From Octopus bimaculoides (Eukaryota), in NCBI RefSeq assembly GCF_001194135.2, contig NC_068983.1, positions 126,153,309 to 126,209,159 on the forward strand: a stretch of 55,851 nt of DNA, in the 5' to 3' direction. The position numbers and the translations under genes are program-made. Each line of letters starts with the position of its first letter. Position 1 is the first letter of the stretch. The notes below the pieces were generated by a model. That model made no database searches and was not told the origin of the DNA. It saw only the letters and a list, made by a program, of their open reading frames with translations. This document shows positions 1,102 to 49,780 of this stretch, piece by piece.

Positions 1102-1410
1102 NNNNNNNNNNNNNNNNNNNNNNNNNNNNNNNNNNNNNNNNNNNNNNNNNNNNNNNNNNNNNNNNNNNNNNNNNNNNNNNNNNNNNNNNNNNNNNNNNNN
1201 NNNNNNNNNNNNNNNNNNNNNNNNNNNNNNNNNNNNNNNNNNNNNNNNNNNNNNNNNNNNNNNNNNNNNNNNNNNNNNNNNNNNNNNNNNNNNNNNNNNN
1301 NNNNNNNNNNNNNNNNNNNNNNNNNNNNNNNNNNNNNNNNNNNNNNNNNNNNNNNNNNNNNNNNNNNNNNNNNNNNNNNNNNNNNNNNNNNNNNNNNNNN
1401 NNNNNNNNNN

Positions 1411-3210: not shown

Positions 3211-4616
3211 TTTATTTAGAAATTCATCTCATGCATTCATAATTAACATTTAGCAATGCAAAACACTAGGACGTGTACAAAGAATTAGAATTTAAAAAAT
3301 GAAAAATGTTTATATTTTCTTCCGTAATGAAGTAGCTTCACAATCATAGTAGAACCTACAGAATCGACAAACTGTAAAGTCATTCAGGTTATTGGTTTGC
3401 CTTTTGCATTGCAACTCCATCTGCATTATTTGTTGTAAATGAACTCCTGTGTCATTGTTAGTCATATTTGTTTACGAGCATTGTCAGATTTTAGTTCTTA
3501 CTTCATTTTGAGTTGTTATTCTTATGTATTGATTTATATAATGAATGAATGAAAAATAGGTATGTTTAGTGGAAAACTGAAATGTAGTAAAGGGAACTGA
3601 ATTTGAAAAGAAATATTGTATTAGAAATGAATGAAAAATATGCATCTAAAATAAAACTCCCGGTCAGATGCGCTCGCCCTTTGACAAATATTGTATTTAC
3701 GTTTGTTTACTTCATTGGGCTTCGGTTCCATAGTTATATGATTGCTGGAAGAAAAAGTGTAATATTGCATTCTTACTTTTCGAGACTGAAAGGGAGATCG
3801 AGGGAAAGAAAGAGAGAGAGAGGGAGGGGGAGAGGAAGAGAATAAAGAGTAGAATATATATATATATGTATATANNNNNNNNNNNNNNNNNNNNNNNNNN
3901 NNNNNNNNNNNNNNNNNNTATATATATATATATATATATATATCTTCAAATGTGAATTAGAAGCAGCGTGTGTGTTGTTAACATTATCGAAAACACACAA
4001 TGTTCGCCAGTCTCCTCAAATTTGACGCGGTGGAGATGACTCTCTCAAAGGGCCACGTAAGAAAACACCTGATATCAAAGTCATAGACAAGTGAGACAAC
4101 TCACCCTAAGTAACATTTACAAGCGATGGACATCAATGCCTTCGACTATGACATCCAGGTTTTTCAACCCCGAAAATTTGAGCGAATCATCTTCTCCGCG
4201 TCAGTTCGCAGTCGACTAGTAAATAGGCAAAGTTCATACATTATGTATCTGTGTCAAATAATTCTTAAAACACTCATTTTACTTCTAACTCATATTTAAA
4301 TTTATTCTTTCGTATGCAGATGCGTTTTACGCTATCTTACATATAGTCATGAATAGGCTGTTCGGTTTGCCTCCGGCTTGCTTCCAGTACGTGATGTAGA
4401 TAAACTACAACAATGGAAAAACATTAAAATCTCTCACTCGATGAGTTTTGTCGCCTTTCTACGACTATGAATTTTAGGTGTTTTAGCACCCGGCGAATTG
4501 AGTATGTCTGTGGGGAGGTGCGTCCTGCGGGTGAGTGTGTTTGTCTGTGTGTCTGTGAATGTAGGGGTGCATTTGTGTATGTCTGTATGTCTATACTGCT
4601 GGCATCATCATTAACG

Positions 4617-4836: not shown

Positions 4837-5359
4837 NNNNNNNNNNNNNNNNNNNNNNNNNNNNNNNNNNNNNNNNNNNNNNNNNNNNNNNNNNNNNNNN
4901 NNNNNNNNNNNNNNNNNNNNNNNNNNNNNNNNNNNNNNNNNNNNNNNNNNNNNNNNNNNNNNNNNNNNNNNNNNNNNNNNNNNNNNNNNNNNNNNNNNNN
5001 NNNNNNNNNNNNNNNNNNNNNNNNNNNNNNNNNNNNNNNNNNNNNNNNNNNNNNNNNNNNNNNNNNNNNNNNNNNNNNNNNNNNNNNNNNNNNNNNNNNN
5101 NNNNNNNNNNNNNNNNNNNNNNNNNNNNNNNNNNNNNNNNNNNNNNNNNNNNNNNNNNNNNNNNNNNNNNNNNNNNNNNNNNNNNNNNNNNNNNNNNNNN
5201 NNNNNNNNNNNNNNNNNNNNNNNNNNNNNNNNNNNNNNNNNNNNNNNNNNNNNNNNNNNNNNNNNNNNNNNNNNNNNNNNNNNNNNNNNNNNNNNNNNNN
5301 NNNNNNNNNNNNNNNNNNNNNNNNNNNNNNNNNNNNNNNNNNNNNNNNNNNNNNNNNNN

Positions 5360-5484
<125 letters not shown>

Positions 5485-6515
5485 CGCGCAGTATACTATA
5501 TCGTGAGGGTATTGATTGAAGATATTGTGTCTACCGGGGCAGGGTTTTGTATTGTTTGTCAAGTCACAATAATGACCTCAGACAGACATTATTTTACGCA
5601 ATATGTGGGTAATTCAAAGATTTTTCAGATTTTTTTTCAGATTGAGTTGTATTAAATCCAATGCTTCGGTGACAATAGGGATAAACTTTGTTTCACTTAC
5701 GTAGCTACCACATGTTAGCGATCTCAATTCTCAAGTCTCCAGATTTATCAACAATTTCTCTTTCTTTCATAATAATATGTTAATCTCCTACCACTGCCAC
5801 GTCAATTATCAGGCACTCTTGTTTGTCCCTCTTAAAGCTTACTGTATCTGACGTTCGGTGCTCTAACACCTTATCTGTCTGGAAGTCAAAGTCCCAGAGG
5901 ATTTTTGCCTTCCCCTTTTCGTCCATTACATTTTCCGGTGTACGTTGGTATCGGGCACACCTAGCCTCATATCCATACATACAGCATAGTAGCCAGTAGC
6001 TCTTTTGGGCTACCTTGTCGTGTCTAAGCTTGTACTCGTTCTGGGCAAGACATTCATAAACACTAACGATGTAAGTTGCGCTTTCGATCCTCTTCGCACA
6101 CATTCTTCGTAGGTCCGTTGCACATGTGTTGTATATATTCTTTCTCACTGAGTTGGTCTTCAATTCCTGGTCCTAGGCAGCGACGATTAGGCTTTCAGTA
6201 TTCGTTTTAGTTGACCCTTGTTGAGTCACCTCCATGCTGCTTCCTTTTCAATATTAAACTATCTCGTCTATAGTATACTCTTTTTATCTTCTGCTTCATA
6301 TGTGTGTGTTGTATCGTACCTAGTTCATTGCGTCCTAAGTATTTGTACGTTTGCCTTAGGTCTAATCCTCTTATTTCATAGACTTTATCTAGTGTGAAGT
6401 TGCTACTCCTAACTAGTTTTTCCTCATTTGACGGTTACTTTGGCACATTTTTCTAAGTCAAATTTCATATTTATTTCTTCGGTAAATACATGCAGTGCCT
6501 GTAGTATTGTTACCA
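5485..6515 (-). mobile_element. Older R4/Dong-like LINE remnant: RT fragment (~6250-6515) joined to zinc-knuckle/RLE domain and 3'UTR
   Basis: MKFDLEKCAKVT..YKYLG, then TESLIVAA*DQELKTN, ECLAQNEYKLRHDKVA, KILWDFDFQTDKVLEHRT.D..CLIIDVAV; several stops and frameshifts. Confidence 0.85.
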
Positions 6516-8409: not shown

Positions 8410-9165
8410 TAATTAGCAGTAGGTTTTCATTGCATTTCGCAACAAGTGTGTTTTTGGGAGCTAATATGGCTGTTTCGCACAGCCAATTCAGGTTTTGGTA
8501 GTTTGCGTGCAGATCGGGAAAAAACAGCAGTGGTAATGTCGTCCACAGTATCCATAGGTGTGTCCACGTGTGAGACAATTATCTCTCCAGCTGCATCGGA
8601 GGGACCTTTACCATCACCAACGGTAAGAAGTTGCTTAGAGAAGTCGCCTGATAAGTTGTCGCCGAAAAGCTGGACCCTCGTTTGTTGTAAGAGTCAAAAT
8701 TGTCACGTCCTGCCACAGGGAAGATAACGTAATGCAAGCCATTACAGCGTCGGCTCTGGTGCCTTTTGGAATTATGGGTAGGGTTTGTCTGAAATCACCA
8801 GACAGAAGGAGGGAAACGCCTCTCATGGGGCTAATGCAGACCTGGATCTCTTTTGGGGTTCTGTCCAGTGCATCAAAGGATCCTTTATGTACCATGGTGC
8901 ATTCGTCCCAAAAAATGAGCTGGCACTTTCGCAGCACTTCTGCTTTTACTGAGTCTTTTGTAATATTGCAGTTGGCTGAGTTGGACGCAGAAGCATTGAA
9001 CGACAGTTTGAAGTTCGAATGAGCCATCCTACCCACGAGCAGTAGAGTCGTGGCAATTCCGGAAGAAGCAATAGCTACAGTGATCCCCTTTTGCTGGCGT
9101 ATTTTTGCTGGGAGGAGTTTAGTCACGAATATTTTACCAGTTCCCCTTGGGGCGTCTGAAAAGAA
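8410..9165 (-). mobile_element. Helitron RepHel fragment, PIF1-like SF1 helicase motifs I-IV, frameshifted
   Basis: FFSDAPRGTGKIF (Walker A), VAIASSGIATTLL..GRMAHSNFKL, IFWDECTM, LLSGDFRQTLPIIP, then FPDLHANYQNLNWLCETAILAPKN in another frame. Confidence 0.92.
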
Positions 9166-9849
9166 AATGCAAACACACACACAAACACACATACATACAT
9201 ACGCATATATATATGTGTATGNNNNNNNNNNNNNNNNNNNNNNNNNNNNNNNNNNNNNNNNNNNNNNNNNNNNNNNNNNNNNNNNNNNNNNNNNNNNNNN
9301 TATATATATATAGCAGAAAGAGAAAGGGAGAGAGAGAAAGCGAGACAAAGAGGAGAATTGTAATATTTATCTGCTGTATGTGCTTGCAAAAAAAAAAAAA
9401 AAATAGCCAGAAAAAGAATGTGCGTGTGAAATATTTGGACAAATAAAATGAGAAAGCTAAAGTGACAAACACCTCCATGTTGCTGTGTGTTTCTGAATTG
9501 AAATCTCGGCGTTGTTAACTAGTTTCACTTAATGATGTGTCGGAAATATACGAGGGTAAATTAAATTTAGTGTAGAACTTTCTTCAACGATTTTGTAGTT
9601 GTTATAATTTTTTAAAAAGCGAATAAATGAAGAAATTATGAAAAATTCCTAATGTAATTTATTAATGTCACTTTTTATAAACTTTTACAAATATATTAGA
9701 ATATAATGCGTCGCAGAAAACTTATATCAGATATATTCATTAGCATATGTTCTGATCCGATAAAGCAAATTATACCTACAAATATTCAGTCGAAAAACAG
9801 TGTATATGAAGGCAGTCATTGGGCAGTTTCTCTTAACACTTGTATTCCA

Positions 9850-10200: not shown

Positions 10201-11220
10201 TTAACAACCAGATTCTTGTGCGCAACGATCGAACGAAGGTATAATTGTCGACGGATTTTTCGTGAACTTCTTAGCTGATCGACACATGCTACTGCAACTA
10301 GCGTATTCAAGATTTCCTGCATTAATTCTTTCTAAGTCTACATATGGAGATTTAGTTTCGTGCAGCGCTTTAAACTGAAATTTTCGATCATCTTTCAGAT
10401 TTTGAATTGCGCTAAATCTATAGTTTTGGCACTGTTTCTTCAAAATGTTGTAAAATGTATTATTAGCAGCACAAGCAGGGGCTCTAATACATTCCCCAGT
10501 CTCACCATCAAAGAAATTCATCTTAGTACTTGTAGCTTGGGCACAGTCAATTGGCAAGCAATTATCATTGTTGCATATCCAGCCAGTATATTTCCGACCC
10601 GAATGCTGGAGCTTATACCCTGACCCCTGTGACTTATCTACGATAGGTGACTCGTCTTCCGCTGACGTAACTCTTGTTTTAAACGGAAGCATACAGGAAA
10701 TCACTGATCCTGCTTTCTCGCTTATAACATCAAACTTACAACGACCTTTGAACTGATAATTGTCTAGCATTAAATGAACGCTAGCATATAACAGAGTTAC
10801 TGTTGCACTTTCTTCTGGATTTATTTTGTATTTACGTTTCCCGATTAAAACAATAGAAACACAGCGATCCGTTTGACTTACTCTCTCAGTTGCCATTTGA
10901 AATTTTTTGGCGCAACATTTGGTTTTTATCGTAAGAAAAACAGGTTTGGCTATATTGTTCCTTATTTCTAATTCAAATATAATTACAGGGCTCTGAGGTG
11001 CCAACGATTTTGCATCAGATCTAATAATTTCAAACGGTGTTTTTGACCCTGCGTCCGCATATCGAGTGAATCTGTTTTTTGCCGGTTCCTTGTACTCAAA
11101 ACGATTATCACGAATATGGTATGGTTTGTGGGTATTTTTTTTCCCTGCCCTACACATGTTCGCTGATACATATTTCACAATCAAAACAATTAGGAGAAAT
11201 CTGAAATATGTACAAAACAT
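10201..11220 (-). CDS. Uncharacterised, apparently single-exon, secreted Cys-rich protein (339 aa)
   Basis: Longest gap-free ORF in the window. Signal-peptide-like start MFCTYFRFLLIVLIVKYVSA-N with an in-frame stop 10 codons upstream. 16 Cys in the mature part; beta-rich segment ~aa 78-183; Cys cluster C216-C264. No transposon motifs or low complexity. Confidence 0.75.
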   Translation of the reverse strand: MFCTYFRFLLIVLIVKYVSANMCRAGKKNTHKPYHIRDNRFEYKEPAKNRFTRYADAGSKTPFEIIRSDAKSLAPQSPVIIFELEIRNNIAKPVFLTIKTKCCAKKFQMATERVSQTDRCVSIVLIGKRKYKINPEESATVTLLYASVHLMLDNYQFKGRCKFDVISEKAGSVISCMLPFKTRVTSAEDESPIVDKSQGSGYKLQHSGRKYTGWICNNDNCLPIDCAQATSTKMNFFDGETGECIRAPACAANNTFYNILKKQCQNYRFSAIQNLKDDRKFQFKALHETKSPYVDLERINAGNLEYASCSSMCRSAKKFTKNPSTIIPSFDRCAQESGC

Positions 11221-11419
11221 AACTTGTAATTGGTGTATGGAATTCTTTTAATGTTTCTAATACTTCTGAAGCTAATGACGTCATTATATTACTTATGTCG
11301 CAAAATATAGTAAACATCACGTGGTAAATGTGATTCTCATTCACTGATCTTTTTCGTTCTTTTTCCTTCTCATTCTGACTGTTTGTGTGTATATGTAAGT
11401 ATATACATACTTGCAAATG

Positions 11420-11465
11420 TATATGTATGTATGTACACACACACACACACATGCGCACACACACC

Positions 11466-11560
<95 letters not shown>
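11420..11560. repeat. (CA)n(TA)n microsatellite upstream of the ORF
   Basis: Direct inspection. Confidence 0.9.
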
Positions 11561-11561
<1 letters not shown>

Positions 11562-12554
11562 CATGTATGTATATAAGTGTGTAAGTGTATATGTGTGTGT
11601 GTGCGTGAATATGAGTGTGTGACTAGGTGTGTCTGAGTGAGAATGCGAGTATGCATGTGTGTTTTTCTTTCTCTAATACTTCCTTTTTCTGTCTTTCACT
11701 ATGGACCTTATTTCGATGTTTCTTTACTCCCCAAGCACGGTGATTTATTTTAAGCAGGAACTTAAAAAGATGAGTCGCCCATTTGCTCTATATTCTGCGT
11801 GTAATTTCACTCTGCATACAATTCATGGATCTTCTTCAAAGTGAAGAATATCCATGCTTTTTTATCCAGCAGGCACACCATCATGTATACATTACTACAT
11901 GGTGTAAGACTACCGGCACTCAGTCCCAAACCGGCAACAATAGTGTGTGGGTGTGTGTGGTAATAATTTTTTTAACAACGACGTGGCTTCGTGATCAATC
12001 AAATTGCGTGAATCCTTGGGCAAGTGTCTTGTATTAAAGCTCTCTTATTGCTTGCATGCCCATCATTTAATACAAAGGAACTGGCGTATAACGAGAAAAT
12101 ACTTTGAAATTAAGGTACCCCTGATATATGAATACTATCGGAATAAAACACGTTTCACGTAAATCGGACCACAGATTCCCGAGAAACGCATTTGTTGGTG
12201 GTATTTATTTCCGTAAATGTATGCTGTAAAACCTAGAGTTATTGCCCTTTACGGAGAAGGCTGGATAGCTTTGTTGGTATAACTACAGATATGTACCTCA
12301 CCGATTTTATTGCCTCATAACTTCCAGAAAAAAATGATACTTTATAATGAAACTTTCAACAAATACCACCTAGATGCTGTGGAGTCAGTATCTATAGGGA
12401 TTTACCGGTAAGAAATTTCTGAGGGGGCGGGGCAAGGAGTTTCGGAAAATTCACATGAACCACATTTTTTCCATTATAAATTTCAGGATAATTGGATTTC
12501 TGTTAATGAAATTTTATACCAATACTTTTCAAACGACATAGTTTACGAGTGTAA

Positions 12555-15743: not shown

Positions 15744-15766
15744 NNNNNNNNNNNNNNNNNNNNNNN

Positions 15767-21319: not shown

Positions 21320-22280
21320 TATTATTGGAAGTAAGAAGGTCAAGTTTGTGTACCATGAAAGAGCGCAAAGATAAAGCACTCTACAAGAAATCGAAAACGA
21401 ATGAAACTGAAAATAGGTAGGTAAAGAAAAGAATGCATGGTCAATTTCATGGGTATGTTGAAGATAAGACAGACAAAGAAAAAAGATGGCTGTGGATGAC
21501 TAAAAGTGATTTAAATTGGAAACGGAGGCTCTTATCTGTGCTGCCCGAGAGAAAGTACTTAAACAAACTACATAAAACACAGAATAGACAACACATCAGA
21601 AAATGGTAAGTGCAGAATCTGTGGAGAAAAAGGGGAAACCATATTGCATATTACCAGCCAATCTATGCCACTAGCCTAGAAGGAATATAAGAGACGCCAT
21701 GAAAATATAGCAAGGATTGTCAATTGGACACTTTGAAATAAGTATGGATTTGACGGAGAAAAAAATTCGTACGACCACAAACCTGACAGCATCGTCGAAA
21801 ATAAAAAAAAAAAACATCAAGAACATATGGGACTTTATGATTCAGTGTGACCATGACATAGAGAATAGGAAGACTGATATAGTATTAATTGAGATAGAAA
21901 ACAAGCTATGCTGGATCATAGATATAGCATGCTCAGCTGAAAACAAGATATGCGATATGGAAGAAAGAAAAGTCGAGAGATATGACAGGTTAGTTTGGGA
22001 AGTTAAGCAGTTGTGGTCGATGAAAAACGTAGCTGTAGTACCAATAATTGTCGGAGCCCTGGGAACAGTGAGCAAAAGTCTCGTGAGGTACGTTGAACAA
22101 ATATGGAATGCAGTAAGGATGGAGCACTTGCAGAAAATAGCACTGCTTGGAACCGCCCGAATACTCCGGAAGGTGCTCGAAAAATAGGTGTTACCATAGT
22201 TAACTGGTAGTGAACAGCTGACACCACAGTGCATCTCCAGCATTAGAAGCTGTGCAAAGGCAATGATGAGGATAATGATT
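21320..22280 (+). mobile_element. R4/Dong-like LINE 3' third (zinc knuckle + RLE), separate subfamily
   Basis: MHGQF, ETEALICAA, CRICGEKGETILH, IWDFMIQCDHDIENRKTDIV..IDIAC..EERKVERY..VPIIVGALG..LLGTARILRKVLEK*; ends in (GAT/AAT) repeats. Confidence 0.9.
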
Positions 22281-26021: not shown

Positions 26022-27156
26022 CATACATATGAGGCACATAACCTAGGAATTAAGACATTGCATTCACGATGGTTAGATCATAGTTCCGATTCTCTCTCTC
26101 TCTCGGGGGTTCGATTTTGGCTGTTAGTGCAATAAGGTATAATTCCTAGTAACTAATTAAAATGAAAATAAGTTAACCCATTTCAAGGGGAACATTTCCA
26201 GTAGTTTTGCGTGAAATTGCTACAAGCCTTGTGTGCCGAAACCGCAAGAAATAACAACCGATGAAAGGAAGAGACAATTAGGAGACGAACATAAAATCTA
26301 AACCAAGGAACGGGTACAGAATCAATGATGAATTAATAAATAAAAGCAAGCAATAGAATGTAGCAAATTATACATGTAATATTTAGAAACCTCTCCAGAA
26401 CTATCACTGTTATAGAGAGAAAATGATAACAACTAATTTTACTTGAAGAAAACTGGATTAAAAAAAAAGAAGAGCAAACAGTTACCTGAACAACGTTGTG
26501 AGAAACTAAAATCGCGATAACAAAAGCATGAGCTAAATAAAAAAATGTATGTTTATTTTGCACATTACCTCAGTGGATCTCAAACATTTACGTGTTACTG
26601 ATACAAAGACGAAATCATCTCGGATACAGGTAAACATTTACACTCCCCCATCTCCCGCATGGAATTTGAGAGCCATAAAATAAAACTCAGCTGGTGTGTT
26701 CAGAATGAGCTACCACAAAAAATTCGAAATGTCGTATATTATCGAAATGTGATAAGAAATGAGAATAGAGGTTTCAATCATCTACTGCAAATATTTTCCG
26801 GATATGAGCACTACGCCATTCTTTTGTGCGTCTAGTAGACATGACATGATTTTTACTACGGCAATTACGACATTTTGTGTTAACAATACAATTATTTCAC
26901 CCATATGAATGAATTTAATGTAAAAGTTCCGTATTCTACTTTTCTATGCTAAAGTTTAATTTTGTTGTGACAAGTTAGTTTCATGTTAATTTAGGTTTGG
27001 AAATGTCAACCATCCATTGCGATTTTCATTTTCTTTATGACAAAGGATAAGTACCCTATTAGCAATTTCGATCAAACGTTATAAATTAAATGCTTCTGGT
27101 TTCTATACATAACGTTAGCCAATTGTGTGCGTTTCATATTTATTCCTTGCTTAATG

Positions 27157-27490
27157 AAGCCAGTTCAATAGGAAGTGCACAACAAGGAATGCACTTCGTA
27201 ATACCGCGCATGAATTTGGCCACAAATTACTCCAGCCTTCTTTTCATCTCGGAAATATTTCATTTTCGTGTAAGGCTCTCCTATTCTTTGAGAATAAATA
27301 AAGCACAAGGACATACATTTAACAAAACTGGAATATATTTGCCACATCCTGTGTTCACCCATGGGCAATTATATGTGGCATTTTCTAGAGCCAGGAAATT
27401 ATTTGATATTACAGTAAGAGTAGTTGAAAGCAACTGACAAGGCAAACAAAAACGTAAATCACTTACAAAACCATTCTGTGTAAGAAAATT
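27157..27490 (+). mobile_element. Helitron helicase C-terminal fragment (motifs V-VI)
   Basis: IPRMNL..FRVRLSYSLRINKAQGHTFNKTGIYLPHPVFTHGQLYVAFSRAR. Confidence 0.92.
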
Positions 27491-27857: not shown

Positions 27858-28868
27858 GTTTTGCATTTCTGTTTATATACATATGTCACATGCATTTGGT
27901 GCAGTGCCTTTTGTAATGTAAGATGTTTGCATCTAATTCAGTGAATAAGCTCATGCTTTTCCGTATGCACATATCATAATCATACGAAATATTGGTTATA
28001 TTTATTTATTTACTTTATAAATATGCAATAAAGATTGTAAACCATAAACAGTTATTCAATATATGTGAATAAATGTTATATTTGTATCGTTGTAATTCAT
28101 TTTCTGTTCCCTTAAACTCTAAAGCACATCATATCTGCCATTCGTATTAAATAAGCTGTACCTTCGAAATTCATTTAATTATATCTAAAAGCACAGACTT
28201 TATTAAAAGTCAGGATATCAAAAGTACTTTTTGAAACTCCTTGCTCGAGTCTAATATACGAACATAAGGTTTTCAAATCTGTAGCCTTAAATCATGGAAT
28301 TTTCACGAGACCTGCTAGTATTTATTTCTTCTGTTGTGGACAACGCGTTAGATCGATCAATTTACACAAGTTACGTCACTGTTGAGTATTACTTAGCGTA
28401 TATTTATAACGCTGTCCTTAGATTACTTGTATGCTTTCATAGAAGCGTGGTCTTTCAAGTTTATTGAAGGACGACTGGATTTTAACTTCGTTGCCGTTTT
28501 GTCGCCTTGCAGATTACATTTGCTCCTATGACTAGTTATTTGTGTATGTTTATGTAACATTTTAGAATATAATTCCGTTTTAATTTAGAACAAAATATTT
28601 CTTTTGTGTCTCAACAGAAATCTTTCATAAACCACATTAATTTTCAATATAATTTCATTAACAGTTTCATGACTTTTTCCCCTTCGGGTTTTTCCCTATA
28701 TTTAACGGTCATTCTAACAACTCTTTTGTTTGTCTTAATAACGGTCATTTACATAGTAATTTCCCTTTNNNNNNNNNNNNNNNNNNNNNNNNNNNNNNNN
28801 NNNNNNNNNNNNNNNNNNNNNNNNNNNNNNNNNNNNNNNNNNNNNNNNNNNNNNNNNNNNNNNNNNNN

Positions 28869-28892
28869 TTTCGAGCCTACGCTCTTCCACAG
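28869..28892 (-). ncRNA. Partial hammerhead ribozyme motif (core + stem II) with a non-canonical CUGUGGA box
   Basis: CTGTGGA-A-GAGC-GTAG-GCTC-GAAA; the remainder falls in the N gap. Confidence 0.55.
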
Positions 28893-30005
28893 AAAGGAAC
28901 ACTGAAAGAAACAAGGAGTGAAAATAAAGAATGTGTAGTGGCTAACGATCTATCATTGCGAATGCCGGACAGAAGGGACACAAAAGAGATCTAGGAAGAA
29001 GGGGAGATAATAAAGTAGTGGTGATCCGAAAACGATGGTGCGCGTGGGTGTGTGTATAAGAGAGTATGTATGTGCGTGTGATAGAGGGCTGGTGACCTTG
29101 ACGTGTGAAGATGTGGACTGGTAAGTGGTCAGTGGGAGTGTGTGCGTTGTGGTGTGATGTGATGTGTTGTGTGGTATGTTGGTGTATGGTGTAGTCGTGT
29201 GTGGTGTAGTGTGATGGTGTTGGAAGGTGGGGAGGTGAAAGTGGGAAAAGTATGTGTGCGGTGTGAGTTAATCTGAGGATTGCGGTAGGGTGGGGTATGT
29301 GGGTAGGCAGAGGTTGAGGTAGAGGTGTGGTAAGTGGGAGGGGTGTAAAGGATAGGGTAGGGTGATATGGGAAGGATAGGTAAGGTGGGGTTGGAATGTG
29401 TGGGTGTGAGGTTACGAAGGATGGGTGAGGATGAAGGGGGGTTAAGGAGAAGGTGGTTATGAGTGAAAAGAAGAGAGGAGAGTAGCAGTTAAGAAACGTA
29501 GTCGGAGAAGAGTTGGAGCAAGAGAGAAGAGCTGGGAAGAAGTATGTGTGAGAAGAAGAGAGGCGAGGGGAGGGGTTAGATGAAGAAGGGAGGAGAGTTG
29601 AGCCAATGTGGTGCAAAGGAGTGAAGAGAGAATATTATTCCCTTTTTACAGCGCAAACGTGTGTCCGGATGGCCCCAGTTCAAGGACAATACGAACACGG
29701 ACAGGTGTTGCAAAGTGTGATCAGTAGAGCGTAAATGGCGCGAATCCGGGGTGTCATTGCCGAATCGGATGCCTCGGAGGTGTTCCGACAACCGGTCAGC
29801 AAAAGCGGCGTCCCATTTGCCCGATGTATAGAGAAGGGCAGAGAGAGCAAGAGATGCAGTATATGACATTGGTAGAAGTACAGGTGAAGGAGTTGGTGAT
29901 GTGATTGAGTCGATGATGGTTGCCGGTGAGGACGGTGGTGTTGGAGCGGTAAGGGCAAGTGCAGCTGCGTAGGCGGGAGCAGGGAACGAGCCGGGTTGGT
30001 ACCCA
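28869..30005 (-). mobile_element. Penelope-like element 3' part: GIY-YIG endonuclease (~30005-29570), low-complexity pyrimidine-rich 3' region, hammerhead-like motif at the gap edge
   Basis: Joined frames read SFTCTSTNVIYCISCSLCP.LYIGQMGRRF / ADRLSEHLRGI..RHLRSTDHT..IIFSLHSFAPHWLN. Confidence 0.88.
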
Positions 30006-32453: not shown

Positions 32454-33259
32454 TGAGAGAAATATATGACCGTGTAAAGATATGAGAGGGTAAGAGTAAA
32501 GGAGTGTGAGGAAAGTAGTAATAGAACCTAAGTGAAGGGCGGGATGAAGAATTTGGGAATATATGTTAAGTTGCTTAGAGGACACGTCAGTGCTTAGTAG
32601 TAGAGAATATATATGTGAAAATGCATACACAAGCATATATAAAACCCTGCTAATATAATATATCTACACCTAGAAACGCATATATTAACATGTACCCTCT
32701 TGTTTCCCTATAAATAATGCATACATTACACGTGCAACACGCGTAAACACGCGTATACACGCATACAAATACATAGGCGTGTATATACATACATACATAC
32801 GTATATATATATATATATATATATATNNNNNNNNNNNNNNNNNNNNNNNNNNNNNNNNNNNNNNNNNNNNNNNNNNNNNNNNNNNNNNNNNNNNNNNNNN
32901 NNNNNNNNNNNNNNNNNNNNNNNNNNNNNNNNNNNNNNNNNNNNNNNNNNNNNNNNNNNNNNNNNNNNNNNNNNNNNNNNNNNNNNNNNNNNNNNNNNNN
33001 NNNNNNNNNNNNNNNNNNNNNNNNNNNNNNNNNNNNNNNNNNNNNNNNNNNNNNNNNNNNNNNNNNNNNNNNNNNNNNNNNNNNNNNNNNNNNNNNNNNN
33101 NNNNNNNNNNNNNNNNNNNNNNNNNNNNNNNNNNNNNNNNNNNNNNNNNNNNNNNNNNNNNNNNNNNNNNNNNNNNNNNNNNNNNNNNNNNNNNNNNNNN
33201 NNNNNNNNNNNNNNNNNNNNNNNNNNNNNNNNNNNNNNNNNNNNNNNNNNNNNNNNNNN

Positions 33260-34568: not shown

Positions 34569-36200
34569 AAATGCACACCGAATACTGAACGGTATCACGT
34601 CTACTAGTCCCTGAGTAAAAAAGGTTATGTGTAATGGAGGTAAGTATATCTGGATGTGGTGCAATTAAGGTAGATCTACATCTGTAATGTGAATGGTGTA
34701 TCGGATTTATGGGGGTTAGTGGTATTAAATGAAAGGCTAGTCGTGTCCTGTATTATGTTATGTGTTCATATTTAGTTGTGGAAGATATATATTGATGGAA
34801 GCTGCCTCTTCATTCATTGTTTGTTGTATTGAGGTGTTCTGTGAACATTGATAGAAGGGAAAACTAGGAAATTAGGATTCCTCGCTATGTGTCCACTGAC
34901 CTGCATCTGTCTGTACTGTGAGTGGCGGATTTGTTCCTTTTCGAGAGTGGTTCTTCCACGGAGTGATATTCCTGTTTGGCCAATATAATTATTACCACAC
35001 CCTAAGCATCTAATGGCATAGATTAGATTTTCCGAAGCACAGGTGAAATTTGATTTAATCTTAAATATTTCACCTTGTTTAAAGTGAAACTCTGAACCCT
35101 CCAAAAGGTGGGGGCAATTACCACAGTTAGGTCGACCACATTTTTTAACTTTTGGTTCTGTTGTTAGTGGATATAGTCTTGCGCTGGTTAATATTTTTTT
35201 CAATGATTGAGGTTGCAGTTTACTTTTGATAATTTTGTGCGAGCCTAAAATTTTGTTCATTGTTTTATCTCTTGTGAGGATGGGTAGATTTTGGATGATA
35301 ATGTTAAAGGCTTCGTTGTTTCTAGAGTTATGTGTGGAGATGTATGGGAGTATATTAAGTCTTGGTTCGTATTTCGGTTGACTTCCCTTAATGTTCGTAT
35401 GTCTATTTCCTTAGCTCGTTTAATTCCTTCATTTATTAACGTTATTGGGTAATGTCTTTTGATTAGCATTGATCTGAGTTCAAAGAGTAATCGTTCACGA
35501 GTATAGGTGTCCGAAACTATGGTACAGATTCTTTTCGCTAGATTATAAGGTATATTAATGTTTATGTGTTTGGGGTGGCAGGAGTTGAATAATAGGTATT
35601 GTTTAGAATCTGTGGGTTTATAGAAGATGTCTGTTTCGATGTGGTTATTGACTATTTTAATTAGGATGTTAAGAAAAGGGAGTTCTTTACTGCTGTCTTC
35701 CATGGTGAATTGTATCTTGCTAGTAATATTGTTAAGCATTAGTTTGAAATCGAGGAGTTTGTCCATGCTATCTTTCCAAAATATAAAGCAATCGTCCAGA
35801 TATCTCTTCCAGTTCTCCTTTAAATAGCAATGAAAAGAGGTGCTATATTTTTGTAGTGGTGATTGATATATTTTAAGCTCTAGGTAACCCATTACAAGGT
35901 TCGCAATCACTGGAGCAGCTTGGGTTCCCATTGCATTTTTGTCCATAGTAAATTGTATCGAACATGAAATAGTTGTTCAGTAGGACGAATTTGAGTGCTG
36001 CGATTATGAATCTGTGGTTGATGCGCTCTGGTATCACTTGTGGGTATTCTTCTAGCCAGAAGGTGATTGCTTCTATACCATAATCGTGTGGGGTATTGGT
36101 GTACAAATTCAGCACATCGAATGATACTATCAGGGTTCCTTCATTCATTTTCTCCGGGTGGTGCTTAAGCATGTCTAAGTCATCCCTGATGAAGATTTTC
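34530..36200 (-). mobile_element. Penelope-like element: RT + GIY-YIG endonuclease in three frameshifted pieces, with downstream pLTR remnant
   Basis: SFDVLNLYTN, AMGTQAAPVIANLVM, WKRYLDDCF, IFYKPTDSKQYL..SCHP, CGRPNCGNC, FTCASENLIYAIRCLGCGNNYIGQTG. Confidence 0.95.
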
Positions 36201-36884
36201 ACATAATTTAGAAATGCTAATCTTGGAATAATCGTAAGATTTTCTCTGTGTTGTTGAGATACTGCATATCATTCGGAAAATATTTTCATAAACATATTTC
36301 GTACAAATTAATTTCTATGATATTTTGTCCTATTACAGTTTTAACTTGTTGTATATGTTATTATATTGCATTGAACCATGTCAATCTAATCATTAAGGAT
36401 GGCAATTAATAGATGAGGAATAAAAACATATTATCAAAGTCATAAGTAACGACATAATTTAGAGGTAGGAAAAAAAAACACATCTAAAGATTCGGTCCAC
36501 AAGCTTAAGAATGTCTACATAAACTGGCATAACTTAAGTATAAATATTGATTATCTAAAAATGTAATGCCTACTTATAGAAGAACATTTTCATATTTTGA
36601 TTCTATGAATGAGAAGAAAATAAGCAGAGATTTCAAAGTATGAGTATCAACAAAACCAGTTTGAAGACCAATCGAAAAATCAAGAGACCCACAAACTTAT
36701 AATAAGAACAAAATGTTGTATTCGTTTCTGTATATAACATTCTCGTAATATATCTTATTAAAAATAATATTCAACACACACACACACACACACACACACA
36801 CANNNNNNNNNNNNNNNNNNNNNNNNNNNNNNNNNNNNNNNNNNNNNNNNNNNNNNNNNNNNNNNNNNNNNNNNNNNNNNNNNN

Positions 36885-41047: not shown

Positions 41048-42632
41048 TTATTATTATTATTATTGTTCAGTAGTTTTATTTTTATAACGTGCTTTCACTT
41101 CACTACCGAGCGCAGCTCTGTGCGCCTTGGGTATGTGCTGCGGTGCTCTTATGTTTATTGTATTGAAACTGTTTTGCGTAGAATGTGTGCAGTACCCAGC
41201 AGTGAAATTTTCTGTATGTTATATATATTTGTAAGTCCTGGTGTTTTTGTTATGTATTTGTCTGAATATTTTTTTATTATACCTAATGCACCTACTATGA
41301 TAGGAATTGTTTCTGTTTTTAGATTCCACATTCGAGTTATCTCTATTTCCAGGTCTTTGTATTTTNNNNNNNNNNNNNNNNNNNNNNNNNNNNNNNNNNN
41401 NNNNNNNNNNNNNNNNNNNNNNNNNNNNNNNNNNNNNNNNNNNNNNNNNNNNNNNNNNNNNNNNNNNNNNNNNNNNNNNNNNNNNNNNNNNNNNNNNNNN
41501 NNNNNNNNNNNNNNNNNNNNNNNNNNNNNNNNNNNNNNNNNNNNNNNNNNNNNNNNNNNNNNNNNNNNNNNNNNNNNNNNNNNNNNNNNNNNNNNNNNNN
41601 NNNNNNNNNNNNNNNNNNNNNNNNNNNNNNNNNNNNNNNNNNNNNNNNNNNNNNNNNNNNNNNNNNNNNNNNNNNNNNNNNNNNNNNNNNNNNNNNNNNN
41701 NNNNNNNNNNNNNNNNNNNNNNNNNNNNNNNNNNNNNNNNNNNNNNNNNNNNNNNNNNNNNNNNNNNNNNNNNNNNNNNNNNNNNNNNNNNNNNNNNNNN
41801 NNNNNNNNNNNNNNNNNNNNNNNNNNNNNNNNNNNNNNNNNNNNNNNNNNNNNNNNNNNNNNNNNNNNNNNNNNNNNNNNNNNNNNNNNNNNNNNNNNNN
41901 NNNNNNNNNNNNNNNNNNNNNNNNNNNNNNNNNNNNNNNNNNNNNNNNNNNNNNNNNNNNNNNNNNNNNNNNNNNNNNNNNNNNNNNNNNNNNNNNNNNN
42001 NNNNNNNNNNNNNNNNNNNNNNNNNNNNNNNNNNNNNNNNNNNNNNNNNNNNNNNNNNNNNNNNNNNNNNNNNNNNNNNNNNNNNNNNNNNNNNNNNNNN
42101 NNNNNNNNNNNNNNNNNNNNNNNNNNNNNNNNNNNNNNNNNNNNNNNNNNNNNNNNNNNNNNNNNNNNNNNNNNNNNNNNNNNNNNNNNNNNNNNNNNNN
42201 NNNNNNNNNNNNNNNNNNNNNNNNNNNTTGCTCGTGTTTTGTGGCTATTTGTATTAGTTTCCCTTGCTTTTGGAGTAGGTATTTTTGCAGTCCTATGGTG
42301 GTTATTTTATAATAGTTTTCTAGCTGTATAAGACCCCTGCCACCTTCTGTGCGTTGTATATATAGCCTTTCTATGTCAGATTTTGGGTGGTGCATCCTAT
42401 ATCCTGTCATTATTTTTCTTGTTTTCCTGTCTATTTTAGATAGTTCGTTTAGTGTCCAGTTAAGGATGTTGTAGCTGTAGCTTATAACTGGGACAGCTAA
42501 AGTGTTGATACCCATTATCTTGTTTTTAGCATTGAGCTCTGTTTTTAGTAGTGATTTAACTCGTCTATAGTACTCTGTTTTTAGTATTGATCTAACTCGT
42601 CTATAGTACTCTGTTTTTAGTATTGATCTAAC
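41048..42632 (-). mobile_element. R4/Dong-like subfamily A, copy 3 (5'-truncated, centre in gap)
   Basis: GINTLAVPVISYSYNILNWT..HHPKSDIERLYIQRTEGGRGLIQLE on one side of the gap and the subfamily A 3' end on the other. Confidence 0.92.
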
Positions 42633-43954: not shown

Positions 43955-44276
43955 TTTGGTCTTGTGCAGCAATTAAAAATCCTTCAGTCTCTGCTTTGAG
44001 TCCTGAGCTTCTCAACCATTGCTGGGATTTTTCTCTGTCTATTTCTTTTACATTTAGTTTAGCCCAGTATTTACCATGTAGGGGCTTTTCTGGCTATCGT
44101 TTTATCATGGTCCGTTGATGTTCTAGTTTTAGTTTGGATTTCATTTGTTTTATAGCTTTTGTTGTTTCTTCTTCTTCTTCTTCTTCTTCTTCTTCTTCTT
44201 CTTCTTCTTCTTCTTCTTCTTCTTCTTCTTCTCCTTCTTCTTCTTCTTCTTCTTGTTCTTGTTCTTGTTCTTGTTC

Positions 44277-44314
<38 letters not shown>

Positions 44315-44341
44315 CTTCTTCTTCTTCTTCTTCTTCTTCTT

Positions 44342-44422
<81 letters not shown>

Positions 44423-48444: not shown

Positions 48445-48614
48445 TTTATTGTGCTGCCACTGTATAAGTCTCTGAGAGATGTAATAAGTATTATTTCTAA
48501 TTATATATATATGCATGTATGTGCATGTAAACGCATGTATGTGTGTGTATATATAGACTATGTACATACATAAATACATCTATACGTGCACCCCCCCCCN
48601 NNNNNNNNNACACA

Positions 48615-49490: not shown

Positions 49491-49780
49491 TATCTACATT
49501 TCCTAATCTAAACTAAAATATCTGGCCTCCAATATTCAAACCAATACTAGTACATTTAATACAGCGATTGAATAACTTATCCATCAGTAATATCTAACGT
49601 AAATGATAAGTTTAATTATGCGTCTAATAGTATTGTTACTATTAATAATTTAACTAAGCATATTATACTACTATTACTGCTGTTGCTGCTGATGCTGCTG
49701 ATGATGATGATGAGGATGATGATGATGATTATGGTGATGATAACAATAATAATACTACTACTAATAATAATAATAATAAT

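What the first reader, a model, noticed from the sequence alone, without database searches (positions are those of the whole stretch)
10201..11220. Orphan single-exon secreted Cys-rich protein in a transposon desert
Seen: a 339-codon open frame in very AT-rich DNA where every other long frame is transposon or microsatellite. It has a clean signal peptide (cleavage VSA-N) and a beta-strand-rich ~105-aa segment with CC/C/C/C. This is followed by the cluster C-x4-C-L-P-I-D-C-x8-NFFD-x5-C-x5-C-x6-YN-x5-C. Inference: an Ig-like domain plus a small disulphide module. From recollection only, not a search, this resembles an uncharacterised invertebrate family (C.P.DC..Y.G.RN.F..C..P.C then CHHG..C.C..GW and a TM helix). 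Best candidate for new biology in the window.
Basis: partly seen in the sequence, partly recalled or inferred. Interest (0 to 1): 0.75.

Follow-up and report, generated by a model that had tools for sequence, protein, structure and literature searches.

The report
Intronless octopus secreted cysteine-rich gene
This is a real, conserved octopus gene for a secreted, disulphide-rich protein that looks like the free-floating outer half of an ancient, still unnamed membrane receptor family otherwise seen in sea anemones and corals; it is a decent uncharacterised gene, not a strange one.

Summary
The 339-codon frame is real. It lies on the minus strand (11220→10201) and is the only genuine long ORF in the window. 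The other long frames are N-runs, microsatellites or transposon debris.

It is intact in Octopus vulgaris (82% aa, syntenic) and in a third octopod (76–77%). dN/dS is 0.38–0.57 overall and 0.21–0.27 in the C-terminal 40%. Indels are in-frame only, all 16 mature cysteines are invariant, and the signal peptide is conserved.

It is not an orphan. Profile–profile comparison (97.9%, E 5e-13; shuffled controls ≤0.7%) links residues 65–303 to the ectodomain of an unnamed anthozoan type-I membrane family (β-sandwich, 6-Cys module, EGF-like, TM, cytoplasmic SH3). The octopus protein lacks the EGF, TM and SH3 parts. The Nematostella homologue has about 12 exons and the octopus coding region has none, which suggests a retrogene.

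AlphaFold and Foldseek give only a generic Ig-like/E-set sandwich. There are no Pfam, PDB, viral or transposon relatives.

Conserved TATA-like, CRE and E-box motifs lie upstream and a conserved AATAAA lies downstream.

My best reading is a soluble extracellular binding protein (ligand or decoy). Expression, splicing and function were not tested here.

The parts
10201..11220 (-). Complete coding sequence, 339 codons plus a TAA stop (10201-10203), with no intron in the coding region
   Evidence: It is intact and collinear in O. vulgaris (L004) and a third octopod (L001-3, L006-7). dN/dS is 0.38-0.57, Fisher p = 3e-7 to 0.014.
11161..11220 (-). Signal peptide, aa 1-20 (MFCTYFRFLLIVLIVKYVSA, predicted cleavage before N21)
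   Evidence: Read from the sequence. It is the only hydrophobic segment. It is 90-95% identical in three octopods, with mostly synonymous changes. The distant relative on L005 also has an in-ORF ATG followed by a hydrophobic leader. SignalP was not available.
11041..11160 (-). Basic, fast-evolving N-terminal linker, aa 21-60, containing C23; predicted disordered
   Evidence: pLDDT is 28-39. It is 55-75% identical among octopods and carries the only (in-frame) indels. The equivalent linker is about 140 aa in the L005 relative.
10678..11040 (-). Ig-like / E-set β-sandwich domain, aa 61-181, with C102-C103, C120, C161 (invariant out to Anthozoa) and C176
   Evidence: AF2 block pLDDT is 58-86. Foldseek top hit is 2r39, TM(target) 0.71, E 3e-5; other hits are ApaG, TMEM106B lumenal, MSP and ASH/PapD-like domains. 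hhalign to the anthozoan ectodomain.
10429..10584 (-). Six-cysteine module, aa 213-264 (C216, C221, C226, C244, C250, C264; motif C-x-P-[IV]-[DN]-C ... FF ... G-x-C-x5-C), predicted as two short β-hairpins
   Evidence: It is 94% identical among octopods. C221/P223/C226/F236/F237/G242/C244/C250 are invariant across octopods and anthozoans. The model here is low-confidence. dN/dS for aa 201-end is 0.21-0.27.
10204..10428 (-). C-terminal tail, aa 265-339, predicted helical, with four invariant cysteines (C309, C313, C333, C339). It replaces the EGF-like/TM/SH3 part of the anthozoan relatives
   Evidence: hhalign homology extends to aa 303. No hydrophobic segment. The stop is at the same position in three species.
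11276..11323 (-). Conserved promoter-like block 56-103 nt upstream of the ATG. It holds an E-box CACGTG (11318-11323), a TATA-like ATATAAT (11283-11289) and a palindromic CRE TGACGTCA (11276-11283)
   Evidence: Three-species alignment A6, coordinates. The CRE and TATA-like motifs are invariant in all three. The E-box is intact in two; the third species has CGCGTG. Function is inferred, not tested.
11248..11250 (-). In-frame TAA 30 nt upstream of the ATG, which closes the frame on the 5' side
   Evidence: The distance is the same in the window and in the third octopod.
9658..9663 (-). Conserved canonical polyadenylation signal AATAAA, about 540 nt after the stop. It implies an unspliced mRNA of about 1.6-1.7 kb
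   Evidence: It is invariant in the three-species alignment A5, coordinates. Similarity to the third species decays just downstream of it. Inferred, with no RNA data.
11379..11640 (.). (AC)n/(AT)n microsatellite that bounds the gene unit on its 5' side. It is context, not part of the gene
   Evidence: The Logan contigs L006/L007 start inside the orthologous microsatellite.
8430..9348 (-). Neighbour, not part of the gene: a decayed, frameshifted PIF1-like (Helitron-type) helicase remnant about 850 nt downstream on the same strand, interrupted by an N-run at 9222-9300
   Evidence: Pfam PF05970, E 5.7e-45. Frames shown. It is partly alignable at the orthologous O. vulgaris site.

Best explanation
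This is a functional, intronless octopod gene. It encodes a basic mature protein of about 319 aa with 16 cysteines, which is predicted to be secreted.

Domain order: signal peptide, then a variable basic linker, then an Ig-like β-sandwich, then a six-cysteine module, then a short helical four-cysteine tail.

It is the soluble, ectodomain-only relative of an ancient, undescribed metazoan type-I membrane protein family. That family's anthozoan members carry the same β-sandwich and Cys module, followed by an EGF-like module, a TM helix and a cytoplasmic SH3 domain.

The Nematostella homologue splits the shared region over at least 7 exons, while both cephalopod-type copies are uninterrupted. The gene therefore most likely arose by retroposition of a processed transcript (less likely by wholesale intron loss) before the octopod species compared here diverged. 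It then acquired its own TATA/CRE-type promoter.

Inferred mechanism: having lost the membrane anchor and the SH3 signalling tail, it cannot signal. It should act outside the cell as a disulphide-stabilised binding protein, either a ligand or a decoy for whatever the ancestral ectodomain binds. The Cys module and tail would form the constrained core, and the linkers and β-sandwich surface the fast-evolving part.

A tissue-restricted role, for example in male reproductive tissue or a secretory gland, is a guess from priors only.

Shown: the ORF, its conservation and constraint, the homology, the missing domains, the absence of introns in the coding region, and the conserved flanking motifs. Inferred: secretion, retroposition, promoter use and function.
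For: - ORF and chance expectation.
- Orthologues: O. vulgaris 82% at a syntenic site, with flanks about 85-87% identical; a third octopod at 76-77%.
- Constraint: dN/dS is 0.38, 0.57 and 0.40 for the three pairs (Fisher p 3e-7, 0.014, 6e-7). For aa 201-end it is 0.21-0.27 (p about 2-5e-5).
- Indels: one 3-nt and one 6-nt indel in the CDS, against many indels of other lengths (1, 2, 5, 14, 17 nt among them) in 805 nt of 3' flank.
- Polymorphism within the third species: 3 synonymous changes and 1 conservative change.
- All 16 mature cysteines are invariant.
- An exhaustive HMMER search of 1.84e9 representatives found only P0003, P0004 (E 4e-19) and Nematostella P0005 (E 5e-4).
- Anthozoan family and architecture: SH3 by Pfam, weak EGF hits, TM helix.
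- hhalign 95.8% (E 7e-9), rising to 97.9% (E 5e-13) over aa 65-303 when the L005 relative is added. Reversed and shuffled controls gave probability 0.7% or less and score 21 or less.
- Anthozoan proteins each hit only this ORF in the window by tblastn, at 1e-5 to 1e-8.
- Nematostella gene: about 12 exons over about 8 kb.
- No EGF, TM or SH3 coding sequence within about 10 kb downstream in the window, L004 or L005.
- Second single-ORF relative with its own signal peptide.
- β-sandwich model and Foldseek results.
- Conserved TATA-like/CRE/E-box and AATAAA motifs.
- Prior: genes of octopod age are most highly expressed in male reproductive tissue (PMC7656900).
Against: - There is no expression evidence. 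The five Logan contigs carrying the third-species orthologue are collinear with the genome and end in a microsatellite and a repeat. They look like genomic contigs, not transcripts.
- Secretion rests on reading the N-terminus by eye.
- Between the two closest species, aa 22-200 has dN/dS about 1.0, so part of the protein is weakly constrained or under diversifying selection.
- The structure model is poor outside the β-sandwich (mean pLDDT 49.7). The Cys module and tail are essentially unmodelled.
- No multi-exon molluscan parent gene was found, so retroposition is argued only from a cnidarian comparison.
- Octopus introns can exceed the 10 kb searched, so distant downstream exons are not strictly excluded.
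- The function of the anthozoan family is itself unknown.
Confidence: 0.6

Rival explanations
1. The ORF is one large exon of a longer spliced gene. Either an upstream exon splices into the TTTCAG inside the signal-peptide codons, or the transcript continues to distant downstream exons that encode the EGF-like, TM and SH3 parts. In that case the protein would be a membrane receptor like its anthozoan relatives.
For: TTTCAG preceded by a T-rich stretch lies at codons 5-7. The anthozoan relatives have EGF/TM/SH3 exons 3' of the homologous region. Only about 10 kb downstream could be searched, and cephalopod introns can be longer (own knowledge).
Against: - The stop codon is at the same position in three species, and the last 75 residues, including four invariant Cys up to the very last residue, are constrained.
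- The ATG is conserved, with an in-frame stop 30 nt upstream.
- Changes in the first codons are synonymous.
- TATA-like and CRE motifs lie 56-70 nt upstream, and an AATAAA about 540 nt downstream, all conserved.
- The independent relative on L005 also has an ATG, a leader and a stop in a single ORF.
- No EGF, TM or SH3 similarity was found in any of three loci.
Confidence: 0.1
2. The ORF is transposon- or virus-derived, for example a passenger or captured gene of the neighbouring Helitron, or an endogenous viral glycoprotein. It would not be a host gene in its own right.
For: It sits in TE-rich DNA, with a PIF1-like helicase remnant 850 nt downstream on the same strand. It is a single exon.
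Against: - No TE or viral relative was found in 1.84e9 protein representatives, in IMG/VR, in JGI metagenomes or in the BFVD fold library.
- There is one copy per window or locus and one protein per genome in the database.
- Its position is syntenic in O. vulgaris.
- No terminal inverted or direct repeats flank it.
- Its only deep homologues are multi-exon cellular genes of anthozoans.
- It is under purifying selection.
Confidence: 0.03
3. It is a dead or dying retrocopy, or a spurious ORF that happens to remain open. It would be annotated only because gene predictors favour long ORFs.
For: There is no expression evidence. dN/dS is about 1 for aa 22-200 between the two closest species. It is annotated only as 'hypothetical predicted protein'.
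Against: - The frame is open in three species at dS up to 0.37, and in a 27%-identical relative.
- The chance of 339 open codons is 1.3e-11 in this composition.
- dN/dS is significantly below 1 overall, and 0.2-0.27 in the C-terminal 40%.
- Indels are in-frame only, and all cysteines are invariant.
Confidence: 0.04
4. The similarity to the anthozoan SH3 membrane proteins is convergent or compositional (cysteine-rich sequences). On this view the octopus gene is a true lineage-specific orphan.
For: The single-sequence E-value to Nematostella is only 5e-4 library-wide. Identity is 22-28%. No intermediate phyla were found.
Against: - hhalign gives 97.9% and E 5e-13 over 218 columns in a single collinear alignment. 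It covers the β-sandwich, the Cys module and the following helix, while reversed or shuffled controls score 21 or less.
- Eight cysteines and the P/FF/G motif residues are in register.
- Four different anthozoan proteins (P0005, P0010, P0014 here; P0005 also by BLASTP 1e-10) hit the ORF independently.
Confidence: 0.05

Closest known systems
Unnamed anthozoan 'SH3 domain-containing' type-I membrane proteins (Nematostella vectensis LOC5503128 / XP_032227280.2; Exaiptasia LOC110251858; Acropora LOC107338416; Montipora, Porites and Desmophyllum hypothetical proteins)
   Same: The ectodomain is homologous over octopus aa 65-303. It has the signal peptide, a β-sandwich with the CC...C...C pattern, the C-x-P-[VI]-[DN]-C...FF...G-x-C-x5-C module and the following helical stretch.
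   Different: The octopus protein has no EGF-like CNHG...C-x-C..GW module, no TM helix and no cytoplasmic SH3. It adds a basic N-terminal linker and a four-Cys tail. It is intronless, against about 12 exons in Nematostella. The anthozoan family itself has no Pfam model for its ectodomain and no paper that I could find.
Ig-like / E-set β-sandwich domains (FixG-related 2r39, ApaG 1xvs, TMEM106B lumenal domain 8b7d, MSP domain of VAP-A, ASH/PapD-like domain of CEP192, HAP2 / Fsx1 domain III)
   Same: The predicted fold of aa 61-181 is a seven- to eight-stranded sandwich. Foldseek gives E 3e-5 to 1e-3 and TM(target) up to 0.71.
   Different: Sequence identity is 8-18% and there is no sequence-level match. 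The hits span many unrelated superfamilies, so only the general fold class is supported. The model is of moderate confidence.
EGF-like and other small six-cysteine extracellular modules
   Same: Six cysteines lie in about 50 residues and are predicted as two short β-hairpins, in an extracellular setting.
   Different: The spacing C-x4-C-x4-C-x17-C-x5-C-x13-C does not fit the EGF signature (which has C-x-C between Cys4 and Cys5; own knowledge). There is no Pfam EGF hit on the octopus protein. The model here is low-confidence.
Retrogene-derived or otherwise truncated soluble paralogues of membrane receptors (soluble 'decoy' ectodomains)
   Same: Only the ectodomain is retained, behind a signal peptide. 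The coding region is intronless where the distant homologue is intron-rich, and the gene has its own compact promoter-like region.
   Different: No parent gene, poly(A) remnant or target-site duplication was found. Binding partner and decoy activity are wholly hypothetical.

Membership tests
Anthozoan-type β-sandwich / Cys-module / EGF / TM / SH3 membrane protein family (unnamed) | Homologous N-terminal β-sandwich with the conserved CC, C, C cysteines | tested here: met
   hhalign 95.8-97.9%, with controls. C102, C103, C120 and C161 are invariant in the 10-sequence alignment.
Anthozoan-type β-sandwich / Cys-module / EGF / TM / SH3 membrane protein family (unnamed) | C-x-P-[VI]-[DN]-C ... FF ... 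G-x-C-x5-C module | tested here: met
   C221, P223, C226, F236, F237, G242, C244 and C250 are invariant.
Anthozoan-type β-sandwich / Cys-module / EGF / TM / SH3 membrane protein family (unnamed) | Membrane-proximal EGF-like module (C-[NH]-H-G-R-R-V-G-S-x-C-x-C-x-x-G-W) | tested here: not met
   It is absent from the octopus sequence. The profile alignment stops at aa 303, just before it, and there is no Pfam EGF hit.
Anthozoan-type β-sandwich / Cys-module / EGF / TM / SH3 membrane protein family (unnamed) | Single TM helix | tested here: not met
   There is no hydrophobic 19-mer apart from the signal peptide. The ORF ends at C339 in three species.
Anthozoan-type β-sandwich / Cys-module / EGF / TM / SH3 membrane protein family (unnamed) | Cytoplasmic SH3 domain | tested here: not met
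   No SH3 was found in the protein or within about 10 kb downstream by tblastn. Note that two coral entries (334 aa) also end just after the TM.
Ig-like / E-set β-sandwich fold class | Two-sheet sandwich of about 7 strands, recognisable by structure comparison | tested here: met
   AF2 block pLDDT is 58-86 over aa 61-181. There are 34 PDB matches with E of 1e-3 or better, all β-sandwich domains. This is a predicted, moderate-confidence model.
Immunoglobulin superfamily proper (I-set/V-set/C-set) | Pfam/sequence signature, with the B-F strand disulphide and core Trp | tested here: not met
   There is no Pfam Ig hit even at E of 10 or less, and no PDB sequence hit. The only Trp is W214, which lies outside the domain.
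Secreted protein (classical signal peptide) | Cleavable N-terminal signal peptide and no other membrane anchor | tested here: inconclusive
   The n/h/c regions and the (-3,-1) rule are satisfied by eye, and the leader is conserved in 3 species plus the L005 relative. No predictor (SignalP) or experiment was available.
Processed retrogene | Intronless copy of an intron-containing parent | tested here: inconclusive
   The coding region is uninterrupted, whereas the Nematostella homologue has 7 or more introns in the shared region. No molluscan parent gene was identified.
Processed retrogene | Poly(A) remnant and target-site duplications | tested here: not met
   No A-tract follows the AATAAA and no flanking direct repeats were found. 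Both are expected to have decayed if the event is old.
Helitron / transposon-encoded or captured ORF | Homology to TE proteins, multiple copies, element termini | tested here: not met
   The neighbouring PIF1 remnant is a separate, decayed frame.

The most novel reading that the evidence does not exclude
An ancient metazoan adhesion or signalling receptor family (β-sandwich, Cys module, EGF, TM, SH3) has so far been seen only in Anthozoa and has never been described. On this reading it survives in cephalopods only as retroposed, secreted, fast-evolving ectodomain copies. These would have been recruited as soluble recognition molecules, for example in gamete or seminal-fluid interaction or another tissue-specific secretion. 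The β-sandwich surface would evolve quickly (dN/dS up to about 1 between sister species) while the Cys-module scaffold stays nearly frozen.
Probability: 0.15. Interest if true: 0.6.

Novelty: new member of a known kind. Interest (0 to 1): 0.35.

Why it matters
The finding shows that the one long clean frame in this 56-kb transposon-filled stretch of octopus DNA is a real, constrained gene and not debris.

It also links that gene to a protein family with no Pfam model for its ectodomain. I found no solved structure with sequence similarity to that ectodomain, and no paper naming the accessions I searched. Defining the family would add a new extracellular domain pair (β-sandwich plus 6-Cys module).

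It would also give a clean example of a membrane receptor ectodomain turned into a secreted protein, probably by retroposition, in a lineage known for many lineage-restricted genes.

In practical terms, it corrects the O. vulgaris model, which starts at the second Met and so loses the signal peptide.

This is useful annotation and a reasonable candidate for expression profiling. Nothing here contradicts current understanding.

Tried and rejected
- Pfam, the PDB sequence search and the PDB profile search on the octopus protein and alignment gave nothing. The FRS2 PTB hits at E 0.12 are noise.
- The profile search of the 5.8e9-protein index with a 5-sequence alignment returned only the three octopod proteins, so it told me nothing new.
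- The first AF2 run, with 3 sequences, was unusable at mean pLDDT 39.
- I first read the five 1.66-1.81-kb Logan contigs as possible transcripts, because their 3' ends are identical. I rejected that reading. They begin in the TA microsatellite, end in a repeat and are collinear with the genome.
- Searches for the SRR/ERZ accessions and the anthozoan LOC numbers in the paper library gave no hits.
- An exact look-up of the window protein and of Nematostella isoform X2 in the contig index found nothing on record.
- IMG/VR and JGI metagenome scans for relatives found none.
- The BFVD fold search returned only generic sandwiches at high rmsd.
- The HAP2 domain III and Fsx1 Foldseek hits rank no better than dozens of unrelated Ig-like domains, so I rejected them as meaningful.
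- The repeat search found no LTRs, TIRs or TSDs around the gene.
- The bacterial promoter/terminator scan is irrelevant to a eukaryote and found fewer sites than in shuffles.
- tRNA and Rfam scans of the window found nothing.
- blastn of L005 against the window and L004 found no shared repeats, so the source organism of the 27%-identical relative remains unknown.
Full report
**1. The observation**

- The quoted features are all present. These are the leader MFCTYFRFLLIVLIVKYVSA|N, the CC/C/C/C pattern (C102-C103, C120, C161, C176), and the string C-x4-C-LPID-C-x8-NFFD-x5-C-x5-C-x6-YN-x5-C (C216 to C264).
- TTTCAG spans codons 5-7.
- At the window's 35% GC, a 339-codon open frame has probability 1.3e-11. 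About 1.5e-6 such frames are expected in the window.
- The other ORFs of 150 aa or more listed mechanically are runs of N read as X, microsatellite frames, or transposon pieces. The large N-runs are 1102-1410, 4837-5359, 32827-33259, 41366-42227 and 50111-50708.
- This is therefore the only genuine long ORF in the window, and the 'transposon desert' description is fair.

**2. It is a conserved, constrained gene of octopods**

A word-indexed search of 5.8e9 proteins found two close relatives.
- One is an Octopus vulgaris 'hypothetical predicted protein' at 82% identity. The other is a 338-aa protein at 76-77% from five Logan assemblies.
- The O. vulgaris locus (OX597816.1, about 35.4 Mb) aligns with the window through the gene and both flanks, so the position is orthologous. 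Flank identity is 85-87%.
- The O. vulgaris model starts at the second Met. The upstream ATG and the leader are intact in the DNA.

Nei-Gojobori estimates show constraint.

| Comparison | dN/dS | Fisher p |
|---|---|---|
| Window vs third species | 0.38 | 3e-7 |
| Window vs O. vulgaris | 0.57 | 0.014 |
| Third species vs O. vulgaris | 0.40 | 6e-7 |

- dS reaches 0.37.
- Constraint is uneven. For aa 201-end, dN/dS is 0.21-0.27. For aa 22-200 it is 0.5, and about 1.0 between the two closest species.
- By segment, the Cys module is 94% identical in both comparisons. The β-domain is 79%, and the two linkers are 55-75%.
- The CDS carries only one 3-nt and one 6-nt indel. By contrast, 805 nt of 3' flank carry nine indels, mostly of lengths that are not multiples of three.
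- All 16 cysteines of the mature protein are invariant.
- Two alleles in the third species differ by three synonymous changes and one Ile/Leu change in the CDS.
- A decaying pseudogene or a chance frame is thus excluded for practical purposes.

**3. No expression evidence was obtained**

The five Logan contigs share an identical 3' end 601 nt after the stop, which I first took as a hint of transcripts.
- The longest start inside the TA microsatellite that also lies upstream in the window.
- All end in a sequence absent from the window's orthologous position, which looks like a repeat boundary.
- They are collinear with genomic DNA.
- They look like whole-genome contigs broken at repeats, so I do not count them as transcription evidence.

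**4. Gene model**

- An in-frame TAA lies 30 nt upstream of the ATG in the window and in the third species.
- A block 56-103 nt upstream is conserved in all three species. It contains an E-box (CACGTG; CGCGTG in the third species), a TATA-like ATATAAT and a perfect palindromic CRE, TGACGTCA.
- A canonical AATAAA about 540 nt after the stop is invariant in all three. Similarity to the third species falls off just beyond it.
- This fits a compact, unspliced unit of about 1.6-1.7 kb (inference).
- No LTRs, TIRs or target-site duplications bracket the unit, only microsatellites.

**5. Relatives beyond octopods**

An exhaustive HMMER scan of 1.84e9 cluster representatives gave only two further hits.
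- P0004 is 461 aa, at 27-29% identity, E 4e-19, from an ENA long-read assembly contig.
- P0005 is Nematostella vectensis LOC5503128, E 5e-4.
- On its contig, the P0004 frame extends to 477 aa with its own ATG and hydrophobic leader (...LFIVYIITMCLGWRLSLA|N). It has a basic linker of about 140 aa, then the same β-domain, Cys module and Cys-containing tail, all in one ORF, in 35% GC DNA full of TA/TG microsatellites.
- Its source organism is unknown, and it shares no repeats with the window.

Nematostella P0005 is a type-I membrane protein.
- Its domain order is signal peptide, β-domain with CC...C...C, the module CKPVNC..YNGKRTFFD..GKC..C, a helical stretch, an EGF-like module (CNHGRRVGSVCVCNDGW), a TM helix and a cytoplasmic SH3 (Pfam SH3_2, above the gathering score).
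- A search seeded with its ectodomain recovered orthologues in Exaiptasia, Acropora, Montipora, Porites, Desmophyllum and one unnamed Logan sequence. All are 'uncharacterized' or 'SH3 domain-containing protein'.

The homology is well supported.
- Profile-profile comparison of the octopod and anthozoan alignments gives 95.8% (E 7e-9).
- With the 477-aa relative added, it gives 97.9% (E 5e-13) over 218 columns, octopus aa 65-303 against Nematostella aa 25-257.
- Reversed and column-shuffled controls gave probability 0.7% or less and score 21 or less, against 97.8 for the real alignment.
- tblastn of three anthozoan proteins against the 56-kb window hits only this ORF, at 1e-5 to 1e-8.

So the protein is not an orphan. 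It is the ectodomain of this family up to, but not including, the EGF-like module.

**6. What is missing, and the intron contrast**

- The octopus protein has no hydrophobic segment other than the leader.
- It has no EGF or SH3 Pfam match.
- No EGF, TM or SH3 similarity appears within about 10 kb downstream in the window, the O. vulgaris locus or the P0004 locus.
- The Nematostella gene spans about 8 kb in about 12 exons, with at least seven introns inside the region homologous to the octopus ORF.
- Both cephalopod-type copies are uninterrupted.
- Retroposition of a processed mRNA, followed by loss or non-inclusion of the 3' part, is the simplest account. It remains an inference, because no intron-bearing molluscan parent was found and no poly(A) or TSD remnant survives.

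**7. Fold**

- With 10 sequences, AlphaFold2 models aa 61-181 as a β-sandwich (block pLDDT 58-86). The rest is poor, at mean pLDDT 49.7.
- Foldseek against the PDB returns 34 matches at E of 1e-3 or better. All are Ig-like/E-set sandwiches from unrelated families: FixG-related 2r39 (TM target 0.71), ApaG, the TMEM106B lumenal domain, complement MG domains, GH3 FnIII-like domains, HAP2/Fsx1 domain III, MSP, and ASH/PapD-like.
- Only the fold class is supported, not any family.
- The viral structure library gives nothing specific.
- The six-Cys module is predicted as two short hairpins at low confidence. Its spacing does not match EGF.

**8. Rivals**

- Transposon or viral origin is contradicted by the exhaustive sequence search, the IMG/VR and metagenome scans, single-copy synteny, the absence of element termini, and the multi-exon cellular homologues.
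- The PIF1-like helicase remnant 850 nt downstream (PF05970, E 5.7e-45) is a separate, frameshifted, decayed frame.
- A larger spliced gene is not excluded without RNA data. It is made unlikely by the conserved ATG and upstream stop, the conserved stop with constrained terminal cysteines, the conserved promoter-like and poly(A) motifs, and the parallel single-ORF architecture of the distant relative.

**9. How it probably works**

Shown: a leader, an Ig-like sandwich, a frozen Cys module, no anchor and no SH3.

Inferred:
- The protein enters the secretory pathway, folds with eight disulphides and is released.
- With neither membrane anchor nor SH3 tail, it cannot transduce a signal.
- It should act as a soluble binder of whatever the ancestral ectodomain recognises, either as a ligand or as a decoy.
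- The contrast between a nearly invariant module and tail and quickly changing linkers and sandwich surface is typical of extracellular recognition proteins.
- A published octopod comparison reports that genes dating to the octopod ancestor are most highly expressed in male reproductive tissues (PMC7656900).
- Intronless genes with TATA-plus-CRE promoters are also often germline-expressed in other animals (own knowledge).
- I therefore rank a reproductive or glandular secretion as the most likely setting, at low confidence.

**10. Novelty and score**

- The gene is already in databases as a hypothetical protein.
- The ectodomain family has no Pfam model, and I found no solved structure with sequence similarity to it and no paper naming the searched accessions.
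- It is a new, truncated, soluble member of an uncharacterised but otherwise ordinary class of extracellular proteins.
- It is worth annotating and profiling, but it would not surprise a specialist. Interest is 0.35.

Noticed in passing
window 1102-1410, 3875-3918, 4837-5359, 9222-9300, 15744-15766, 28769-28868, 32827-33259, 36803-36884, 41366-42227, 45299-45495, 48600-48609, 50111-50708, 54429-54445: There are thirteen runs of N (assembly gaps or masking). The large ones are translated as X and create most of the window's apparent ORFs of 150 aa or more, so those frames are artefacts.
   Followed up: yes
window 8430-9348 (-): A decayed PIF1-like helicase (Helitron-type) remnant, Pfam PF05970 E 5.7e-45, lies here. 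It is frameshifted and interrupted by an N-run and a microsatellite. Part of it aligns at the orthologous O. vulgaris site, so the insertion predates the species split.
   Followed up: partly
window 27090-27437 (+): This ORF ends in ...INKAQGHTFNKTGIYLPHPVFTHGQLYVAFSRARK..., which looks like the C-terminal motif region of a PIF1/Helitron helicase. It may be a second Helitron fragment. This was judged by eye only.
   Followed up: no
window 34814-35946 (-): Two adjacent ORFs look like a Penelope-like retroelement remnant. One has an RT-like region (...YLDDCFIFW...). It is followed by a GIY-YIG-like region (...NLIYAIRCLGCGNNYIGQT...). Pfam gave no hit at E of 0.01 or better for 35257-35946.
   Followed up: partly
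window 5801-6434 (-), 21717-22187 (+), 44906-45283 (-), 49683-50110 (+), 53774-54304 (-), 54366-54830 (-): These are repeated fragments of one or more LINE-type retrotransposons. They show an RT core (...FQGNTLSPLLFCLAL...YMDDLKLYA...) and a characteristic tail (...ILWDF/M..IQTD/HTD...IPIIVGALG...). Several are truncated by N-runs.
   Followed up: no
L004 9938-10960 (O. vulgaris OX597816.1, ~35.4 Mb): The deposited O. vulgaris protein model (319 aa) starts at the second Met. The upstream in-frame ATG and a 21-codon signal-peptide-encoding segment are intact, so the annotated product wrongly lacks its leader.
   Followed up: yes
L005 9953-11386 (ENA ERZ21867824 contig ctg118661l): A 477-aa single-ORF relative (27% identity) has its own signal peptide and a basic linker of about 140 aa. 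It sits in microsatellite-rich 35% GC DNA of unknown organism. No repeats are shared with the window, so it is probably not a close octopodid.
   Followed up: partly
window 11276-11323 (-): A perfect palindromic CRE (TGACGTCA) abuts a TATA-like ATATAAT, with an E-box 35 nt upstream. The CRE and TATA-like motifs are invariant across three octopods at dS up to 0.37. This is a compact promoter signature worth a reporter test.
   Followed up: partly
window 28001-30000 and 44001-46000: Composition is strongly skewed here. GC skew is +0.38 at 28-30 kb, where a Pro/Thr/His-rich low-complexity frame runs 28942-29616. AT skew is -0.48 at 44-46 kb, over Ser/Cys/Tyr homopolymer-like frames. These are presumably simple-sequence arrays.
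   Followed up: no
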